From positions 868,001 to 932,000 of the forward strand of contig MU060486.1 in the NCBI GenBank assembly GCA_013265495.1: a DNA stretch of 64,000 nt, given 5' to 3'. Under the pieces are notes generated by a model, which ran no database searches, was not told the DNA's origin, and was given only the letters and a program-made list of their open reading frames with translations. This stretch comes from Vicugna vicugna (Eukaryota). Each line of letters starts with the position of its first letter. Position 1 is the first letter of the stretch. The translations under genes were made by a program, and so were the position numbers. Below, piece after piece: positions 10,358-64,000 of this stretch.

Positions 10358-11109
10358 NNNNNNNNNNNNNNNNNNNNNNNNNNNNNNNNNNNNNNNNNNN
10401 NNNNNNNNNNNNNNNNNNNNNNNNNNNNNNNNNNNNNNNNNNNNNNNNNNNNNNNNNNNNNNNNNNNNNNNNNNNNNNNNNNNNNNNNNNNNNNNNNNNN
10501 NNNNNNNNNNNNNNNNNNNNNNNNNNNNNNNNNNNNNNNNNNNNNNNNNNNNNNNNNNNNNNNNNNNNNNNNNNNNNNNNNNNNNNNNNNNNNNNNNNNN
10601 NNNNNNNNNNNNNNNNNNNNNNNNNNNNNNNNNNNNNNNNNNNNNNNNNNNNNNNNNNNNNNNNNNNNNNNNNNNNNNNNNNNNNNNNNNNNNNNNNNNN
10701 NNNNNNNNNNNNNNNNNNNNNNNNNNNNNNNNNNNNNNNNNNNNNNNNNNNNNNNNNNNNNNNNNNNNNNNNNNNNNNNNNNNNNNNNNNNNNNNNNNNN
10801 NNNNNNNNNNNNNNNNNNNNNNNNNNNNNNNNNNNNNNNNNNNNNNNNNNNNNNNNNNNNNNNNNNNNNNNNNNNNNNNNNNNNNNNNNNNNNNNNNNNN
10901 NNNNNNNNNNNNNNNNNNNNNNNNNNNNNNNNNNNNNNNNNNNNNNNNNNNNNNNNNNNNNNNNNNNNNNNNNNNNNNNNNNNNNNNNNNNNNNNNNNNN
11001 NNNNNNNNNNNNNNNNNNNNNNNNNNNNNNNNNNNNNNNNNNNNNNNNNNNNNNNNNNNNNNNNNNNNNNNNNNNNNNNNNNNNNNNNNNNNNNNNNNNN
11101 NNNNNNNNN
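10358..11109. other. Assembly gap (752 N)
   Basis: Run of N. Confidence 1.
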
Positions 11110-29988: not shown

Positions 29989-30173
29989 NNNNNNNNNNNN
30001 NNNNNNNNNNNNNNNNNNNNNNNNNNNNNNNNNNNNNNNNNNNNNNNNNNNNNNNNNNNNNNNNNNNNNNNNNNNNNNNNNNNNNNNNNNNNNNNNNNNN
30101 NNNNNNNNNNNNNNNNNNNNNNNNNNNNNNNNNNNNNNNNNNNNNNNNNNNNNNNNNNNNNNNNNNNNNNNNN
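29989..30173. other. Assembly gap (185 N)
   Basis: Run of N, flanked on the right by a CA-rich repeat. Confidence 1.
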
Positions 30174-30179
30174 ACCAGC

Positions 30180-30255
30180 GCGCACACACAAGCACACACA
30201 TGCACACATGTATGCACACACACACACACGTGCGCACACAGACACACACACACAC
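30180..30255. repeat. Imperfect (CA)n repeat
   Basis: gcgcacacacaagcacacacatgcacacatgtatgcacacacacacacacgtgcgcacacagacacacacacacac. Confidence 0.9.
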
Positions 30256-31106
30256 CCCGTCTTCTCCTCGGTTGCCCGCAGAAGGGAGGGTCCCAGTCGC
30301 TGGAACACAGCTATCCTGTTTTTTGAGGAAAAGAGACGTAGTTAGGAAACGACAGGAGCTGGAGCTGCGAGAACAGGTTTGGGATTGCGCTCAGTTGTGC
30401 TGAGGAAAACAGGAAAAGTTGAGAAAGAAATGAGACTTAATTTTAATGAAGGGAAATTTGCTGCTGAGTAAAGAGATTGCAGGAGGTGGGGGGGGGCGGG
30501 CTTCCGCGGGGAGCAGGGCTCGGGATCTGTGGGGACGGACAACATCTGACTCTTCAAGAAACAGCCTTAGCGCACAAAAGCCTGAGAGACGGAAAATGCC
30601 GGGTGTAGACGACAAAACAGAAGTCTGCGCTGCAGGCGAGAAGGGACCCGCTTCCTTCCCAGATGAGCTCTGGGGGGTCGCTTCAGGACACGCCTTCCTG
30701 CCTGGGCGATGCCTGCTTCTCTCACGCGAGGCCTGCGCGCATGGGGAGACGCTGCGGAGCCTGGCAAGGAGCCTCTGCCTCTCCTCCCTGGAGCAGCTTG
30801 ATTAGACTTTCGCATCTCGGGTTTCCGGGGCATCGTAGAAACTTCATGACCGTTTGTTAACTAGTAATAGAATTTTTAAAATTACGTATAAATACATACG
30901 TATTCTGATGTACTGAAAGTAGGAAATAGATGTACACGCATATGTATACATATGTGTATATATAATGTCTCACTGTTTTTTGGTTCTTTCTGCATGTTGA
31001 TAGCTGTTACAATTACTTCAGTGGGAATGGAGTTTTGTTGGAGTAAAAAGACAAAGGTGAATTTTCTCCATTTGCTAGTTCAAATTAGTAAGCTAACGTC
31101 CAAGCA

Positions 31107-33600: not shown

Positions 33601-34470
33601 CTTCATCTCTATAAACTGAAGTGTAGTTGGTTCACAATGTGTTACTTGCTGGCGTAGAGCACAGTGGCTCACTTATGCACATACATGGATTCTTTTCAGA
33701 TTCTTTTCATTATGGTTTATTACTGTTTCTGAACGTAGTTCCCTGTGCCGTATCGTAGGACCGCACTGTTTATTTTATACATAGTTGTGTGTTTTTGCTC
33801 ATCCCAAACTCCTAATTTATCCCCCGTTTTCCCCTCTGGTAACCATAAGTTTGTTTTCTGTGTCTGTGAGTCTGTTTCTGTTTTGTAAATAAGTTCATTT
33901 GTGTCGTTTTCTTACATTCCACATAGAAGTGATACCGTGTGATATTTGTCCTTCTCTGTCCAACTTACTTCNNNNNNNNNNNNNNNNNNNNNNNNNNNNN
34001 NNNNNNNNNNNNNNNNNNNNNNNNNNNNNNNNNNNNNNNNNNNNNNNNNNNNNNNNNNNNNNNNNNNNNNNNNNNNNNNNNNNNNNNNNNNNNNNNNNNN
34101 NNNNNNNNNNNNNNNNNNNNNNNNNNNNNNNNNNNNNNNNNNNNNNNNNNNNNNNNNNNNNNNNTGTCTGTTTGAATTAGAGTTTTCTCTGGATAGATGC
34201 CTGGGAGTGGGATTGCTGGATCATATGGTAAGTCTGTTTTTAGTTTTCTAAGAAACCTCCATACCCTCCTCCACAGTGGCTGCACCAAACTGCATTCCCA
34301 CTGCAGTTCAGGAGGCTCCCTTTTCTCCACACCCTCTCCAGCACTTGTCATTTGTGGACGTTTTGATGGTGGCCCTTCTGCCTGGTGTGAGGCGATATCT
34401 CGCTATGGTTTTGATGTGGATTTCTCTGATTATTAGCGGTGCTGAGCATCTTCTCATGTTCGTCAGCCTT
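33601..34470 (-). mobile_element. 5'-truncated L1 (3' UTR plus ORF2 C-terminus), cetartiodactyl-type, spanning a gap
   Basis: Minus-strand translation [10 protein letters not shown]...[28 protein letters not shown] is the L1 ORF2 C-terminal region. The 3' UTR motif cccaaactcctaatttatcc...ggtaaccataagtttgttttctgtgtctgtgagtctgtttctgttttgtaaataagttcatttgtg is typical of laurasiatherian/cetartiodactyl L1. Confidence 0.92.
33972..34164. other. Assembly gap (193 N) inside the L1
   Basis: Run of N. Confidence 1.
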
Positions 34471-56030: not shown

Positions 56031-56395
56031 TCGATCCAGAGTGAACAGTGGGAAGCCAGGAGAACTGAGCTCAAGTCCCGAAGCTGTCATTGCCCGCAAG
56101 TGTGATGCGGGGCAAGCTGACTAATTAAACTGGGCCCTAGGTTACTCACTAAAATTGGAGGAAGGAGGAGGGAAGAGGGGAGGGGCCCACGGGGGGCAGG
56201 AGGGGGCGGGGAGGAGGTGATAATAACACCCGTTCCGCTACAGTAATAAAGTGTGGCCGTCGTGAGAATCTGGGGAGATTGGGTCTACGAAGGCCTCTGT
56301 GAGCTGTGTAGAACTCTACGAACGTGACTTGTTTTTTCTAACCTCCTAATAAATGTTTTCAGGAATTTTTCTAGGATTTAGAGCGAGGCACGTTA

Positions 56396-56416
56396 AAAAA
56401 GAAAGAAAGAAAGAAA
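56396..56416. repeat. (GAAA)n short repeat
   Basis: aaaaagaaagaaagaaagaaa. Confidence 0.85.
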
Positions 56417-56936
56417 CCACAGGCCATGCTCTAAACAAACTGGGTTTCTCATTTTGCACTTACCAGGAGGAAGAGGCTGCCACTCCTTGCTAATAGCCCA
56501 TTTGTCTTGCAAATTTCTAGAATGAACAGATTTTGGAATAAACGCCACATAATCTGTGATGACAGGCCTCTCATCTCTTTTTTATTAGCTCAGTCTTCCC
56601 AGCGTCTGAGCCACGCAGCGCCAGCACCACTTTGATCACTCAGGCGGCGGGGCCGCGTGCGTCTCCCCCGCTCACGGGCACGGAGCCGGGTCCCCCGCCA
56701 GGCTCTCGTTACGTACGGAGCCCGGGTTCTGGCCGCCAAATGCACCTGGCTGGTCGGAAAAGAAAACCAACAGGAACCACACGGCCTCTGCGCCTGCGTG
56801 TCCTTCTCCCCACTGACCTCCACCTGCTCATGTTTAACGCCTGAATTTGACTCGGAGCTTGTGGGGAACTTGACTTGCGTGAAACACCCCTTTGCTTAAA
56901 ACAGGTGGTCTCCGTGGGGCAGTGTGACGCGGTCAG

Positions 56937-56986
56937 CACTAACCTCTCTCTCCGCCCTCCTCCCTTTTGTCTTCCCCTAGGTAAGT
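56937..56986 (+). other. Candidate recursive splice site (3'ss immediately followed by consensus 5'ss)
   Basis: CACTAAC (56937-56943), 36-nt tract with 34 pyrimidines and no AG, TAG (56978-56980), then GTAAGT (56981-56986). Confidence 0.6.
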
Positions 56987-59900
56987 GACGTTTGATTATT
57001 GTTTTGAGCATCTTCGAGAGAGAGCTCAGAGGCTGACCCAAGTCTCGGTTCCCATGGAAGGAAGTTTTTGGCCGGTCACTGGCCACCCGCCCAGGTGTCC
57101 CCGCGGCGTGAAGGGGCGCACGGAGGTATGGCCGTTCACTGCTTCTGGGGTTGCGTCTGCTCGTGCTGAAGGAGCTGTGAGCGCTGGGTCGGTGTCGGGG
57201 ATGCAAACAGGGAAGTTGCTGGGAGGTGGTGCCGAGAGGCGGGCGCGTCGCCTCTGTGCGTACGGGGCTCCTGAATTCTGTTGCTCTCCTCACTGAAAAT
57301 GGACTTCATAAAGCATCTAACTGTAGTTCTGCTGAGGACTCCACAGATAGCGTCTGCCTGTTGTTGGAAGAACACAGGTTCACGTATATTTTGTGTGTGC
57401 ACCAGCTGGGGCCGCGACTCGGTCTGAGAAAAATCACTCAGTTCCGTCTTCCCAGATGGTGGCCTTTGGCAGGCTTGAGCATATGGTCGAAACGCCGCAT
57501 AAAACATGAGGAGAAGTGCAGGGGGCCGTGGCTGATGCGGTCCCGGGGACGATGGTGCTCCGTGCTGCTGTGTCTGTAGCTTCTGCTGCCCTGAGTCAGT
57601 GCAGGGCTGTTCTGTCAGTGCTGGGCTCAGACGCCTCAGTGGACCGTCAAGGGGCCGTGTGGGTTGTGAGTCCCGCCCTAGAGCCTGGAGGGTCTTCTCC
57701 GCAGGTCGTGAGGGTCAGACGAGGGCTGGGTGACAAGGGCTGAGTCTGCACCAGGAGAGGCCACGACGGTATTGTAAACAGGCAACCCCCGACCTCGATC
57801 TATACACAAGGCAGGTGCAGCTGCAGTGCATTTTGAGAATTTCCCCTGGACACCCCTCGGCCCGCTGAAGTGGTGGGAACCTGAGCAGGTGTGGCTGAGG
57901 GAAATCTCTCGCTCTGACTTGAGGGGAAGGCAGACTCTTCCTCATGTCCCTGCGTCTCCGCCGTTCGCTGACACCGGTTCACGTTCTAGGATCGTCTGTT
58001 ACTCCCTTTATTGGGCTAAACTCGTGGAGCATCCCTGTCTACTTGTTAAAAGACAAAAACAGTAAAATGATGGTTCACGCACAGGTAGAGAACGAGCAGT
58101 TTCATTTAACTCGCCGTCATTCAGAAGGAAACCGGCCGATGGCGCGTGTGCTTCGAAGCGGAAGTCAAGCAAGTGCAGACGCACATGGGACGAAGGGAAC
58201 TGAAACCAGTTTCCAAATGGACACGAAACTGGCCTTCTCGCGACGTTGGGGGCGGGGGAGGGGTCTGACAGACCTGCACCTGATGGAACTCACCTCCTTG
58301 TCTGCAGACAGAACTACTTTGCATTGCCACCAATTACCCGTGATTTACAGAGTCATGAAAGAACTCAGAAGCAGGGGAAGTCCGGAACGGGGCAGCCCAG
58401 CAGGCGATGTGCTGTTTTCCATGAGAGGCACCTGGGGGTCTTTTTGGCTTATTTCTAATTTCCTCACAGACCCAAGAGTGTAGGTTTTTGAACAGGAGTT
58501 CGTCGTGCACCTTATTTTCAGATTCTATCTGGTGTCCCTATTGACTCAAGGTCAGGTCTGCGCCAAGTCTGGGACGTCAGACGGTACAGCCTCCCTCTGA
58601 CGGAAGCACGCCTACTGCCATGTTCTGTGACTTCCCTGGAATGCCCGGTTTTACCGCTGCTGTAAAAGAAACTTTAGTATTTCCCCGAAAAAGTACAGAT
58701 TCTTAAGAGACATTTGTTCAATGAACGGGATCTTTAAAGCTGAGCATTAGCTAGGACGTCCTTTTTTCATTGGTTATTGGTTCAAGGACCTCGTCAAAGG
58801 GCCCCCCCAGTGGAAGAAGCTGGATTTGGAACTGCCCGTTTGCAGTCAGCCCCTCTGCCCTTGACACACGTCTTGTCCACGTGAATTCACCTGCCTAAGC
58901 AGGGCGGTGTCCGCAGGCCTCATGCCGGGTTAAGGTCAGGGGGACTGTTCCTCGGCCGTGGCACGTTGCATCTCAGCTCCGTGACGGCCTCTGCCAGATG
59001 TGGACATGCTTTAAGGTGTCTCATTCACCTGCCTGGGGGCACCTCCCAGCTCCCAGCGGGAGCAGGGGCCAGCGGGGAAGGTGCTCGGTCTGAAGGGGCA
59101 GAGAGGTCGGACTGGCTGGACGCCTCCTCCGTGCAGCACCGTGGTGGCAGCCCCAGTCACAAGCTCTGGGCCGTGGGTGCGACTGCCTCTGGCAGACGTG
59201 AGCGGGGGCTCCCTGCGGCCCGTTTGCCTCTGCAGACTCTGCCTCGCGCTGTCGTCACGGATGCGGACCCGGCGTGGTCCGTCCGGAGCTGGGCCCCACG
59301 TGGACCCACGGTGACGGCCCTGCTCCCCCACCCACAGCCTCCCAGGAAGTCGGGTCGTTCCCCAGTTAGCAGCTCCCTGAGGTCTCCCCGCCTCCTCTCA
59401 CATAGGAGGCCCAGCTGTGCTCCTGAGGGAAGTCTGAAAGGCCTGTTCCAGTATTTTTCTTGCTCATAAACCATCTGGAGTTTTTTGGGTTTTTTTTTTT
59501 TTGTCTCTTTCTGAGGTTTTTTCTTTGAGGGCGTAAGGAGGAAGCGCCCACCGAGAGCAGACTCAGCGGAGACGTCCCGCGGGGCCCTGCTCGGTGGGCG
59601 CCTGGGTGCCACCGGAGTCGCCGGGCGGGTCTCTCCCGGAGGACTTGGGAACCGCCCTGACACAGCTCAGCCTGAGCTCCTCTCCTTCGGGGTAAACTGG
59701 AACCGGAAGGTTCCGCTGACTCAGGCGATGCAGTTGGCCAGCGGTGCCGCTGAGCCAGGCTGTTTGCGCTGTCTCCTCTTCCCTCGCGTCTCCACGGCGG
59801 GTGCGATGTGAGGGGAGAGCCTGACTGCTGGTCGTGAACTGGTTAGGAGCTGGTTTGTGCTGCCCGTTGCATGAAGGACCCCAGATCTCGAGGGCGAGCA

Positions 59901-61899
59901 ATCAGGCATACCCCGGACCAGGCCCCGCCAGCCTGGCGTCTGGTCACTCTCCCGAGGGCTCACCACGTCTGAGATAATCCACTTTCTGGCTTTAAATTCT
60001 AAAACACAAGCATGTTTTGTAGATTGAAACACAAAAACATGACAGGAGATGCTGCCTTCTTCCTCTGGGTCGCAGAGGGCGTGTCTCTGGGACGATGAGA
60101 AAGAAGCAGGGGTTGAAAGAAGGGGGCGAAGGAGAGAAGCCCGGGGTGTTTGTTGAGACTGTCGTTCCTGCGTGTTTGCTGGTCCTTCCTTCCGCGTCCA
60201 CCAGCTCTCCCCAGACCTGGAAGCCGCCGGGTCTCTGTCAGACGTGGTGATGGAGCAGGTGGTCCCCCGCCCACCTCCCATGCGCCTATCCTTCCTCCCT
60301 CCTCTGCCCTCTAGGTACCACGTCATGCCCTCCCCCAGCCTGCAGCCTGGAGAAGAGCATCTGGCGTGCAGATTTTAGCTGCAGACTGAGGTCTAGAGCT
60401 GGGATGAGGAGGCGCACGCGGTCAGTGGCAGGTGAGGGGTGGGACCCAGGTCCCGCTATGACCCTCTGTGGCTTGTTCACTGAACCTCCCTCTCCCTGGA
60501 GCCCACGTACCGTGTCCCTCTGGAGGATGCAGTGAGGCAGGGGGACGGGCATCTGGAATGCAGATTACTACGACACGTTTGGGGCCCGTTGCAGGGACTT
60601 TGGCCGAAAATGTCCGTCCGAGTAACGGGGGCTGTCTTGACCGCTTCCTCTCGCCCCTGCACTGGGTGCCGGGCTGCTGGCACCCCCGTCCCACCGTGAT
60701 TGTGCTGATGGTCCCCCTCCCTGCACGTGCGGCAAGCTGTCCCTTTTTTATTTATTGGGAAACCAACAAAATAATATTGAAGGGACCATAGCACACGTCA
60801 CAATGTCATACGTGGAGTGAAGACAGGGGCTCCTGGAGGGAGGGAGGGCCCCTTGTGAACCTCCAGGAGGTTTTCTGGGTGCTGGGAAGGAGCTGAGAAG
60901 CCACAACAGGAAAAAAAGCGACATCTACCCACCTCGCAATGAGCTTTTCTGGGAGCTGCAAACGGCATTTTTACTCTCGGAGAAAAGGGCTCTTTTCTCC
61001 CCGCCCTTTTGATTTAGACTTCTGTGAGCCGAAGCGTCCCGGTGTTTAATGGTCGGTTTTAAAATGGAAAGGGCCCGTCTGTGTCAGAACACAGGCCCGG
61101 CCCAGCCAGCACGGCGCTTTGTTTGATTCTGAGGCTTGTTTGGGATAGACGGTATTTTTATAGCTTCTGCTTTGCTTCAGTGACGGCCGTGCGGACGTGG
61201 CCCCCCAGGACGGGCTTAACAGTGGACACAACCGGAGGCCGTTCTCTGGGGGAAAGTTGCCGCTGTGCCTGCACCGACTGGGAGCTGCACGTCCAGGCCG
61301 AGCTGGCTCCTCACGGCCGGCCTCAGGCCACGGGGAGGGGTTCTGGGGGGGGTGTGTGGGCGGGGGGCCTTCAAAAGAGCCAGCTCGATTTTCCTGTGAA
61401 CATTTCAGAGGAGCAGCAGCGAGTGAAATGCTGAGATGGGCGTTTCATCAGCGTGGTTCAGTCTCTGCTCAGATGTGGCCGCGGGGAGGGCTGGGGCTTG
61501 GGAGAGCAGGGGAGAAACCTCCCAGGGCAGTTCCAGCCTCTGTGATCTCACCTTTTGCCAGATGAGTCCAGAAGGAGAGGAAGGCAGCGTGGTGAGAGGG
61601 ACTGGCTGGCACCTGGGGCAGAGGTGGTGGGGGGAGGCAATGCAGAGCCCAGTGGGGCCTTTCAGGTGCCGCTTTGGAAGTTGGTAGATGCCAGCACTGC
61701 AGGGAAGGATGGGGCTGTGCCCGCCAGGGTGCCCAGGGCAGCAGCACCCCGAGGACCAGGGGCACGGGCGGGTGAAGACACGGGGACAGTAGATGAACAC
61801 GGACGGAGGAGGGGGGCTCTGGGGTCTGGGAGGCACGAGGCTCAGCCCTGAGGGTCGTGGACCACTGCACCGGGGCGGTGACCGTCAGCAGCTCCGCGT

Positions 61900-61936
61900 C
61901 AGCGTCTGTCTTGTCTAAACAGCGTCTGTCTTGTCT
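61900..61936. repeat. Small tandem duplication (17 bp x2, 20-bp period)
   Basis: cagcgtctgtcttgtct-aaa-cagcgtctgtcttgtct. Confidence 0.9.
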
Positions 61937-64000
61937 TGTATTATCACGATTCTGTAGATGAAGCGGTGCTGTCAGAGAGGATTACAGAACAAACAAGAAC
62001 ACGGAAGAATAACAACAAATCCCTAAAACTTGCGTCCCGGGGGCGGCGCAGCTGGTTAGGGCAGAGCACGGCCCTGCCCTGGGGCTCTGTGCCCGGGGGC
62101 TCTGTGTGGTACGACCGATGTGCTGTCGACTCACCTATGAGACGCGATCTTTAAACTGGGGGCCGCACCCTTGCCCCAAACCCTCACCGTCCAAACACCG
62201 GAGCCTTGCAGGCTGACGGCTGAAAGCACACCTCTCGTTTGAGGGTTTGAGATTTATTAAAACTCAAGGGTCCCCAAGAGCGAGAGCACCTTGAGCTGCT
62301 GTTTATTCTGAAAACACCACCCCTTGGTCACAATAGCAGTTTAAACCAGGCTCTCTCAAGTCCTGAGCGTGGGAACGCTTCCAGAGCCCACCAGAGGGTC
62401 CTGGGAACCCAGGGCAAGTCGCGTGTGCCCCGTGGAGCAGGCTCTGGGCCTCTGGGGTGTCCCCTGCGGTGCCCACCTGCTCCCACACGACGGAGGGGGG
62501 AAGCCGTGTAGACGCCGCAGTGAAACGCAGAGAAGCTGCAGGCGGCGGGTTTCCCGAGGCCCCCGTTCTAGGAGCGGCCGTCCCCGTGGTGTGAGTGGAG
62601 GTACTGCATGCAGGCTGCCCCGGTGGGTAGGAAGGTTCTGGAAGCTGGAGTCCTGGGAAGGGGGCCTCTGAGGGTTGCCACGGCCACGTCTTGCCGGGGC
62701 CTCCCCCACCGGCCCAGGCCTGGGTGGTCTGGTCTGGGCAGCACGGAGGGTGAGTGGGGGGCAGCGCCCAGAGCCTGTGCAGAGCCCGAGTCCTCCGCCG
62801 TTGTAGGCTTCCGTGGACCCTAGAACTTGAATGGCCGAGGACGAGGAAACAGGAGCGTCAGCGCTTGTCCAGCTGGCGCGTTGGCTACTGCGAGGCCTGG
62901 GGGACGGCAGCCCGCCTCCCCTGTACCTGTGCCTAGAGGGCAGCGGCCCTGCCCCTGCCCCTGCCCCTGAGACGGACTCGCTGGTAAGTGTGGGAATGAG
63001 GGGCATCACTTAGAGTCAATCTGCCGCCAAAACACGAAGGACGATGAAGCTTGGACCCGTCAGGTATCTGGTCGCTCATGAAAATTTCGTACATCAGGGT
63101 CCATCGTCCAAACGGGCGCAGAAACAAACTGTGAACCTCGCCCTCTGCTCGTCACACCCTCATCTCGACAAGCAGACGCCGCTGTCCAGGGTGGTTCTGG
63201 TCCTCGCTGTTTCTTACCTGTCGCTGCGGGGTGTCCTCGCCGGCCGGGCACACCTCCCACTCGTCTGTGATGGGGTCAGGGGCGGTGGTGGGCCCGGCCT
63301 GTGCCGGCCCAGCTGCGGGGAACACGCAGCTAAGCCCTCCACGTGCGCAGTGTCCGAAGGCTGCTCTCCTGCCTTTTATCCCAAGAGAAAGGGCCGAGGG
63401 GCCGAAGCCGGCAAACGCACCCCTTCACCCTGAGTCTGGCCTGAACCCCGTCCCGTGCGGTCAGGCCCCTGCGGGCTGGCTGGCTGGTCCAGGGCGCAGG
63501 TTCCGACTCTGGCTGTTTGTGAGGCTCACGGGGAGGATGGGAAAATCAAGACCGAACATGAACAGCGGCTCTCAGGGCTGGCTCCACGGGCTGAGGTTTA
63601 GCCGGCCTGGGCAGAGCCCGGGCGTCCCATGTGACAGAAGGCCCCGCGTGGCTCTGCCGTGCCCGGGTGAGCGCCGCGTGGGGAGGGTCTCTGCACCGGC
63701 CGTGCCGGGGTTGGCCCCAGGCCATCCTGGCTTCCTGCTTCTCCCAGGCCGTGGCCGAGCCGGTCTCCTCTGTGTCTGGAGAACTTGGCTTGAGAGGACG
63801 TCACCACCCTGGGGGCAGGACTGCCGGGGGACCTGCCGCCTGGTGGCCTGTGGGGTCTGCCCAGGGCTCAGGGCCTGGCTTCAGGGCAGGGTGGCCACGT
63901 ACCCTCACCCCACCCTCACACCTGGTTCAGTCCAGCATCAGAACTGAACCGTGGGAATCAAGTGAAACCGCGCTCCCCTCTCAGGTGGTGTCTGGTCCTT

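What the first reader, a model, noticed from the sequence alone, without database searches (positions are those of the whole stretch)
56937..57131. Near-textbook recursive splice site (AG|GTAAGT 'zero-length exon') deep in a GC-rich intron
Seen in sequence: branch point CACTAAC with the branch A at 56942, 38 nt before the junction; an AG-free tract of 34/36 pyrimidines; TAG; and with no spacer a perfect donor hexamer GTAAGT. The following sequence has stops in all three frames (TAA 56982-84, TGA 56986-88, TGA 56993-95). Possible downstream donors are CAG|GTGTCC (exon end 57094) and GAG|GTATGG (exon end 57125), giving a 114- or 145-nt RS-exon. It lies outside any repeat I recognise. Established: vertebrate recursive splicing uses YAG|GURAG sites with a downstream RS-exon, often with premature stops, in very long first introns such as CADM1/2, NCAM1, NTM, OPCML, ROBO2, ANK3, PDE4D and HS6ST3. 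Inference: this is a recursive or poison-exon switch of an unidentified + strand host gene, unusual for sitting in GC-rich sequence. Alternatives are an alternative last exon encoding only x-K-stop, or the scar of a precisely deleted exon.
Basis: partly seen in the sequence, partly recalled or inferred. Interest (0 to 1): 0.72.

Follow-up and report, generated by a model that had tools for sequence, protein, structure and literature searches.

The report
Candidate recursive splice site, acceptor used
A very strong splice acceptor sits directly against a perfect splice donor in non-coding camelid DNA, and one RNA contig from a related camelid shows the acceptor in use, so this is a credible but unproven recursive-splicing exon of an already known kind.

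Summary
The nonamer YAGGTAAGT alone is no more than chance. The combination is rare: it joins the best-scoring donor of 6,939 GTs in the window to one of its 4 best acceptors.

RNA contigs from four runs of a related camelid (about 3-6% diverged) cover 55.2-60 kb patchily. Coverage is at least ten times what DNA contamination could give, so the region is transcribed. One contig in run X3 carries 26 foreign letters (...GAGCTAGAGCTGA), then matches the window from 56979 to about 57125. That is an upstream exon, absent from this window, spliced to the AG at 56980. The junction would read AAG|GTAAGT, a consensus donor. Only the + strand gives canonical splice signals, and window-wide G>C and T>A skews also mark + as the sense strand.

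The acceptor and the 145-nt stop-laden exon are therefore supported. Use of GTAAGT as a donor, which is what recursion means, is not tested. The host gene is unidentified, and conservation is seen only within camelids. Recursive-splicing exons are common in vertebrates, so this is a new member of a known kind, of modest interest.

The parts
56937..56943 (+). Candidate branch point CACTAAC (branch A at 56942, 38 nt upstream of the AG)
   Evidence: Read directly. It lies at the upstream edge of the 42-nt AG-free zone. Its use as a branch point is not tested.
56943..56977 (+). Polypyrimidine tract (33/35 pyrimidines; 19/20 in the 20 nt nearest the AG)
   Evidence: Only 7 of 9,268 AGs in the window have >=19/20 pyrimidines upstream, and only 4 also have an AG-free zone of >=42 nt.
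56978..56980 (+). 3' splice site TAG; the intron ends at 56980
   Evidence: a contig in run X3 (word depth 4.39) has 26 letters foreign to the window, then matches from 56979 onward. Of the three possible cut positions, only 56980|56981 gives a canonical AG. Minus-strand readings would give CT, TA or AG as the intron start.
56981..56986 (+). GTAAGT: the first six bases of the exon and a potential recursive 5' splice site (the junction would read AAG|GTAAGT)
   Evidence: It is the best of 6,939 GT sites on both strands of the window by my own approximate donor matrix. Its use as a donor is not tested.
56981..57125 (+). Putative 145-nt RS-exon or cryptic exon, with stops in all three frames within 15 nt
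   Evidence: From the bin depths, the X3 junction contig covers 56979 to about 57123-57127. A 4-nt GGAA indel at 57056 between the two species shifts the frame of the ATG-57054 reading frame and brings it to an early stop, so the exon is non-coding.
57126..57131 (+). Candidate downstream donor GAG|GTATGG that would define the RS-exon
   Evidence: 98th percentile of GT sites in the window. The X3 contig ends about here. A contig in run X2 (57089-57320) reads through it unspliced.
57095..57100 (+). Weaker alternative donor CAG|GTGTCC
   Evidence: 85th percentile only. The X3 contig runs past it, so it was not used in that RNA.

Best explanation
This is a cryptic recursive-splicing exon (RS-exon) inside a long + strand transcription unit of a camelid, most likely a long intron of an unidentified gene or long non-coding RNA.

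Proposed mechanism:
1. The strong 3' splice site is recognised (CACTAAC branch point, 35-nt pyrimidine tract, TAG).
2. An upstream exon lying more than 57 kb away, and ending ...CTGAAG, is spliced to base 56981.
3. The junction then reads AAG|GTAAGT, a consensus 5' splice site.
4. That site competes with the weaker donor GAG|GTATGG at 57125.
5. If the re-formed site wins, the 145 nt are removed with the rest of the intron and leave no trace. This is recursive, 'zero-length exon' splicing.
6. If the downstream donor wins, a 145-nt non-coding exon with stops in every frame is included, giving a poison-exon or minor isoform.

Shown: the motif, its rarity, transcription of the region, and one spliced junction at the predicted acceptor in a related camelid.

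Inferred: the identity of the foreign letters as an upstream exon, the competition between the two donors, and recursion itself.
For: - **Motif and signal strength:**. The best donor in the window abuts one of its 4 best acceptors.
- **Junction:** the X3 contig has 26 letters (TAATGGCGGGACAGAGCTAGAGCTGA) found nowhere in the window on either strand at <=3 mismatches. They are followed by 56979 to about 57125. Only five loose ends were reported in the 6,000 bases laid, so one landing within 2 nt of a site predicted in advance has a chance of roughly 0.4%.
- **Contig start fits a graph branch (inference):** 26 loose letters plus AG make 28 upstream-exon bases, and adding GTA gives 31, the Logan word length. 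The contig therefore starts at the first word unique to the spliced form, provided the upstream exon's own intron begins GT followed by a base other than A. That is what an assembly-graph branch at a real 5' splice site would produce.
- **Spliced and unspliced forms coexist:** contigs in X2, X3 and X22 follow the genomic sequence up to 56974, 56930 and 56940. The relative therefore has the ordinary upstream sequence as well.
- **Depth:** the junction contig (4.39) is at the level of neighbouring intronic contigs (3.3-5.4). This fits a splicing intermediate or minor isoform, not a constitutive exon.
- **The coverage is RNA:** word depth of 3-8 in runs of 0.5-0.9 Gbases cannot come from DNA of a 2-Gb genome, which would give at most about 0.4x.
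- **Strand:** G>C by 4.2% and T>A by 6.0% across the window, each in 48 of 63 1-kb bins. This is the non-template-strand and intron signature (PMC10030826).
- **Stops:** present in all frames.
- **Fit to the published model:** strong RS-5ss sites outcompete the downstream donor of cryptic RS-exons (PMC6224609, PMC5126111).
Against: - The junction rests on a single short assembled contig from one run of a different, though related, species. The raw reads were not seen.
- No joint was reported, and the upstream exon could not be located.
- No evidence of any kind exists for the second step. There are no lariats and no saw-tooth, and contig depths upstream and downstream of the site are similar.
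- X1 covers only the upstream side of the site.
- The host gene is unknown, so the intron length and the position in the gene are unverified.
- Conservation outside camelids is unknown.
- The 3' end of the contig (about 57123-57127) is my arithmetic from bin depths, not a listed coordinate.
- Exons that happen to begin with a donor-like sequence are common: 1.7-4.9% of human exons (PMC6224609).
Confidence: 0.5

Rival explanations
1. It is an ordinary low-abundance alternative or cryptic exon (56981 to about 57125) of a long non-coding RNA or 5' UTR. The acceptor is real, but the GTAAGT at the exon start is just exon sequence. It is never, or negligibly, used as a donor, for example because the exon junction complex represses it.
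For: The same junction contig fits this reading equally well. Between 1.7% and 4.9% of annotated human exons re-form a donor-like junction, and most are kept in the mRNA through repression by the exon junction complex (PMC6224609). The 4-nt indel at 57056 shows the exon is non-coding, as lncRNA or UTR exons are.
Against: The re-formed site AAG|GTAAGT is the strongest possible class of donor and is far stronger than GAG|GTATGG (13.1 against 7.4 bits). Experiments cited in PMC6224609 show that raising RS-5ss strength forces skipping even when the exon junction complex is present. The exon's depth is no higher than that of the surrounding intron, so it is not well included.
Confidence: 0.27
2. 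It is a chance juxtaposition with no function. The X3 contig would then be an assembly chimera, a template-switch artefact, or a structural difference between the two species' genomes.
For: The nonamer alone is at the chance level. A few to about 20 such composite motifs are expected by chance in a whole genome. The support is one contig in one of four runs. No 'joint' was called.
Against: The break falls within 2 nt of a site predicted before any RNA was examined, and only the canonical AG reading fits. Word depth of 4.39 means several reads carry the junction. Contigs from the same study follow the genomic sequence up to 56974, so the relative's genome is collinear there. The contig start matches a k=31 graph branch at an exon|GT boundary.
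Confidence: 0.15
3. It is an alternative last exon. The acceptor is used and the transcript then runs on unspliced to a nearby poly(A) site, ending the protein after one to four extra codons.
For: Stops follow immediately in every frame. RNA coverage continues downstream without joints to about 59.1 kb. The X2 contig reads through the 57125 donor.
Against: There is no AATAAA or ATTAAA on the + strand between 56981 and 62255. Coverage is just as deep upstream of the site, so there is no step up at the exon start.
Confidence: 0.06
4. It is a minus-strand feature. The reverse complement of CACTAAC is GTTAGTG, so GAGAGAG|GTTAGT could be a minus-strand donor following a purine-rich exon.
For: This can be read directly from the sequence. 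A 194-codon open frame spans the site on the minus strand.
Against: That open frame has no homologues and no Pfam match. The observed break at 56979-56981 gives non-canonical intron ends on the minus strand. The window-wide skews point to + as the sense strand.
Confidence: 0.02

Closest known systems
Cryptic RS-exons at vertebrate recursive splice sites (Sibley et al. 2015, as described in PMC5126111 and PMC6224609; e.g. CADM1/2, NTM, OPCML, ROBO2, ANK3, PDE4D, HS6ST3)
   Same: It has the YAG|GTAAGT junction and a strong acceptor. A downstream donor could define an exon of about 100-150 nt. Premature stops lie in that exon, the upstream partner is far away, and the exon is present at only a low level in RNA.
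   Different: The host gene is unknown. The setting is GC- and CpG-rich (56% GC) rather than the AT-rich long neuronal genes. The RNA evidence comes from reproductive-tract libraries, not brain. No saw-tooth, lariat or second-step evidence exists. Conservation is seen only between two camelid lineages.
Annotated RS-exons repressed by the exon junction complex (Blazquez et al. 2018, PMC6224609)
   Same: It meets that paper's working definition of a putative RS-exon, an exon whose junction with the preceding exon re-forms a 5' splice site.
   Different: Those exons are mostly constitutive and well included. This one is no more abundant than the flanking intron. Its re-formed site is at the top of the strength range, where repression is expected to fail.
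Drosophila ratchet points (Duff et al. 2015; PMC8605326, PMC6110457)
   Same: A long pyrimidine tract, AG|GTAAGT, and the 'zero-length exon' outcome.
   Different: The animal is a mammal. By the vertebrate model the site needs exon definition through a downstream donor. The fly consensus and the intron context differ.
Poison (NMD-triggering) cassette exons
   Same: A short exon with stops in all frames would truncate any reading frame that enters it.
   Different: It is unknown whether the host transcript is coding. NMD sensitivity is untested. Poison exons are usually highly conserved, which could not be assessed here.

Membership tests
Vertebrate recursive splice site with RS-exon | A 3' splice site immediately followed by a 5' splice-site consensus (YAG|GTRAGT) | tested here: met
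   TAG|GTAAGT at 56978-56986. It is the top donor of 6,939 GTs, and the acceptor is among the 4 best of 9,268 AGs.
Vertebrate recursive splice site with RS-exon | RNA junction joining the upstream exon to the first base after the AG | tested here: met
   One contig in run X3 of a related camelid, word depth 4.39: 26 foreign letters, then 56979 onward. The foreign letters are absent from the window. This is a single contig from one run and a different species, so the support is weak.
Vertebrate recursive splice site with RS-exon | The junction re-forms a strong 5' splice site | tested here: met
   The upstream letters end ...CTGA plus the shared AG, giving AAG|GTAAGT. This scores 13.1 bits on my own approximate matrix, higher than every GT in the window. 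MaxEntScan was not available.
Vertebrate recursive splice site with RS-exon | The re-formed donor is actually used (lariat with its 5' end at the RS site, saw-tooth read density, or loss on mutation) | not testable with these tools
   Only assembled contigs of mostly low-depth libraries were available, and the single read-laying run was already used.
Vertebrate recursive splice site with RS-exon | A downstream 5' splice site that defines the RS-exon | tested here: inconclusive
   GAG|GTATGG at 57125 is at the 98th percentile. The X3 contig ends at about 57123-57127 by depth arithmetic. No junction from 57125 was seen, and X2 reads through it.
Vertebrate recursive splice site with RS-exon | Location in a very long intron of a long gene | tested here: inconclusive
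   The upstream exon is not within the 56.9 kb upstream. No coding signal was found in the ORFs examined across the 64 kb. Sense-strand skews hold throughout. The host gene and the intron length are unknown.
Vertebrate recursive splice site with RS-exon | Premature stop codons in the RS-exon | tested here: met
   Stops at 56982, 56986 and 56993, one in each frame.
Vertebrate recursive splice site with RS-exon | Conservation of the site above the intronic background | tested here: inconclusive
   Contigs from the relative align through the tract region without indels (56565-56974: 12 differences in 408 letters, about 3%, against about 3-8% for most of the other contigs listed) and from 56979 on. 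Per-base differences at the motif were not listed, and no other mammals could be compared.
Annotated, EJC-protected RS-exon | High inclusion in mature RNA | tested here: not met
   Exon contig depth is 4.39 against 3.3-5.4 for the flanking intronic contigs in the same run.
Alternative last exon | A polyadenylation signal shortly downstream | tested here: not met
   No AATAAA or ATTAAA on the + strand from 56981 to 62255.
Poison exon (NMD switch) | Inclusion rises when NMD is blocked, and the host is protein-coding | not testable with these tools
   The host gene is unknown and no NMD-inhibition data exist.

The most novel reading that the evidence does not exclude
A functional, conserved recursive-splicing switch operates in a GC- and CpG-rich long intron and is active in non-neural (reproductive-tract) tissue. 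That is outside the AT-rich long neuronal genes where vertebrate recursive sites were defined, and would suggest the mechanism also serves long introns in GC-rich isochores.
Probability: 0.25. Interest if true: 0.45.

Novelty: new member of a known kind. Interest (0 to 1): 0.3.

Why it matters
If real, the site adds a textbook-quality recursive-splicing exon in an unusual setting: GC-rich DNA, non-neural tissue and a little-studied mammal. It would also flag an unannotated long transcription unit in this camelid. It would not change the understanding of splicing, because hundreds of YAG|GT recursive junctions and thousands of putative RS-exons are already described in vertebrates. Practically, it shows that a sequence-only prediction of a splice acceptor was borne out by an independent RNA junction at the predicted base.

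Tried and rejected
- **Rfam scan of the whole window:** no RNA family, so this is not a snoRNA-host or TOP-gene first exon.
- **TOP-type first exon ending at 56980:** rejected. In the RNA the pyrimidine tract is absent and the sequence after the AG is present.
- **Host gene:** Pfam on 20 ORFs, both the longest and those with the best GC3-GC2 contrast, gave nothing credible. A scan of 801 open frames showed no coding-like GC3 excess.
- **N runs as hidden exons:** their flanks are L1-like or microsatellite sequence, so no. I did not try to fill them.
- **Orthologous DNA through the spurious 194-codon minus-strand frame:** no homologues.
- **Two exact-match scans of metagenome contigs:** one for the site and one for the upstream-exon letters, both with zero hits.
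- **Upstream-exon letters inside the window:** absent on both strands. This also rules out a back-splice from within the window.
- **Repeat origin:** 56600-57400 is unique in the window.
- **Earlier scan notes:** none near this place.
- **Sibley et al. 2015:** not held in the library. I used PMC5126111 and PMC6224609 instead.
- **MaxEntScan:** not available. I used an approximate donor matrix from recalled textbook frequencies, for ranking only.

Full report
**1. The observation**

One search confirms every element on the + strand.
- CACTAAC is at 56937-56943, with the branch A at 56942, 38 nt before the last intron base.
- The tract 56943-56978 has 34 of 36 pyrimidines.
- No AG occurs in the 42 nt upstream of the acceptor.
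- TAG ends at 56980 and GTAAGT occupies 56981-56986.
- Stops fall at 56982, 56986 and 56993, one in each frame.
- The two proposed downstream donors exist. CAG|GTGTCC (exon end 57094) is weak and GAG|GTATGG (exon end 57125) is decent.

**2. Is it more than chance?**

YAGGTAAGT alone is not. It occurs once against 0.48 expected, and 39 of 100 shuffles have at least one.

The composite is rare.
- Only 3 of 125,256 positions on both strands have >=34/36 pyrimidines upstream.
- Only 4 of 9,268 AGs equal this acceptor in both tract and AG-free length.
- The GTAAGT is the best-scoring of 6,939 GT sites. That ranking uses my own matrix from recalled textbook frequencies and is a ranking only.
- Of the 17 AGGTRAG sites in the window, none of the others has more than 25/36 pyrimidines upstream.

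The joint expectation is about 1e-5 to 5e-4 per window, or a handful to about 20 chance cases per genome. The motif is therefore unusual but cannot prove function by itself. The segment is unique within the window.

**3. Surroundings**

Earlier scan notes identify the genome as a camelid. I did not check this independently.

The whole 64 kb is 56% GC and rich in CpG. I found no coding signal.
- No open frame among 801 shows the GC3 excess expected of exons in GC-rich DNA.
- 20 ORFs gave no credible Pfam match.
- Rfam found nothing.
- The four N runs are flanked by L1-like, AT-rich, non-coding or microsatellite sequence with no sign of exon boundaries. I did not try to fill them.

The + strand carries G>C by 4.2% and T>A by 6.0%, each in 48 of 63 1-kb bins. 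[quoted passage not shown] Replication-associated skew could contribute, so I treat it as supporting evidence. It fits the window lying inside a + strand transcription unit.

**4. RNA evidence**

The runs that hold this sequence are RNA libraries labelled reproductive-system metagenome. Their contigs differ from the window by about 3-6%, so they come from a related camelid rather than this animal.

In four runs, contigs cover 55.2-60 kb patchily at word depth 2-8 with no joints. These runs hold only 0.5-0.9 Gbases. DNA of a 2-Gb genome could give at most about 0.4x, so the region is transcribed. That step is an inference.

The key datum is one contig in run X3, at depth 4.39.
- It carries 26 letters, TAATGGCGGGACAGAGCTAGAGCTGA, that lie on nothing in the stretch, then matches from 56979 onward.
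- Those letters occur nowhere in the window on either strand at up to 3 mismatches.
- From the bin depths, the contig ends at about 57123-57127, next to the 57125 donor and past the 57094 one.
- The shared AG leaves three possible cut points. Only 56980|56981 gives a canonical AG intron end on the + strand.
- On the minus strand the intron would begin CT, TA or AG, none of which is canonical.

Contigs from the same study follow the genomic sequence up to 56974 (X2), 56940 (X22) and 56930 (X3). The relative's genome is therefore collinear upstream, and two forms coexist, as expected for pre-mRNA plus spliced RNA.

Only five loose ends were reported across the 6,000 bases. One falling within 2 nt of a pre-stated position has a chance of about 0.4%.

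A further consistency is an inference. The 26 loose letters plus AG plus GTA make 31, the Logan word length. The contig thus begins at the first word unique to the spliced form, provided the upstream exon's own intron starts GT followed by a base other than A. That is what an assembly-graph branch at a real exon|GT boundary would produce.

**5. What the RNA does and does not show**

It supports use of the acceptor, and it shows RNA that contains 56981 to about 57125.

The junction would read AAG|GTAAGT, a consensus donor at 13.1 bits. The downstream donor GAG|GTATGG scores 7.4 bits.

The exon's depth equals that of the surrounding intronic contigs (3.3-5.4). It is therefore not a well-included exon of an abundant mature RNA. 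It looks like a splicing intermediate or a minor isoform.

A 4-nt GGAA indel at 57056 between the species shifts the frame of the reading frame that starts at ATG 57054 and brings it to an early stop. The exon is therefore non-coding.

Nothing shows the second step. I have no lariats and no saw-tooth. X2 reads through 57125 unspliced. X1 covers only the upstream side of the site.

**6. Mechanism**

In the vertebrate model, an RS-exon is defined and spliced to the preceding exon, and the re-formed 5' splice site then competes with the exon's own donor. Strong re-formed sites win, and the RS-exon, which usually contains a stop, is skipped (PMC6224609, PMC5126111).

This site has every sequence requirement in near-ideal form, and its first step is supported. 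I therefore favour a cryptic RS-exon, with confidence 0.5.

The rivals are:
- an ordinary minor exon whose GTAAGT is never used as a donor (0.27);
- a chance motif plus a contig artefact or structural difference (0.15);
- an alternative last exon (0.06), disfavoured because no AATAAA or ATTAAA occurs from 56981 to 62255;
- a minus-strand feature (0.02).

**7. Comparison and novelty**

By the working definition in PMC6224609, any exon whose upstream junction re-forms a 5' splice site is a putative RS-exon, and 1.7-4.9% of human exons qualify. According to the review PMC5126111, Sibley et al. (2015) examined about 400 YAG|GT junctions.

This is therefore a new member of a known kind. Its unusual aspects are the GC-rich context, the non-neural source of the RNA and the near-perfect signals.

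I could not name the host gene, find the upstream exon, or test conservation outside camelids. Attempts through homologue search and metagenome scans failed.

Noticed in passing
window:1-64000: The whole window shows + strand skews: G>C by 4.2% and T>A by 6.0%, each in 48 of 63 1-kb bins. It has 44 CpG-island-like segments and no detectable coding exon. This looks like one long + strand intron or non-coding transcription unit in a GC-rich isochore.
   Followed up: partly
window:55190-56137: Contigs from three RNA runs all stop at 56130-56137, a few bases after an ATTAAA at 56124 and just before a purine-rich low-complexity run (56150-56215). All four runs have zero coverage at 56200-56399. This may be a transcript end or merely an assembly or filter break.
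   Followed up: no
window:57663-57821: One contig in run X2 matches these 159 bases with no difference, while neighbouring contigs from the same related species differ by 3-8%. It could be a conserved element or a polymorphism.
   Followed up: no
window:57052-57063: A tandem GGAA GGAA in this animal is a single GGAA in the related camelid (4 nt left out at 57056). This shifts the frame of the only ATG-initiated reading frame in the putative exon and brings it to an early stop.
   Followed up: partly
window:33850-34290 and 30174-30260: The N run at 33972-34164 lies inside an L1 3'-end-like fragment in + orientation. The N run at 29989-30173 is followed by a (CA)n microsatellite. The 752-nt N run at 10358-11109 lies in AT-rich (29% GC) sequence.
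   Followed up: no
window:56709-57293 (-): A 194-codon open frame spans the site on the minus strand. It has no Pfam match and no homologue among 5.8 billion proteins, so it is a chance open frame in GC-rich DNA.
   Followed up: yes
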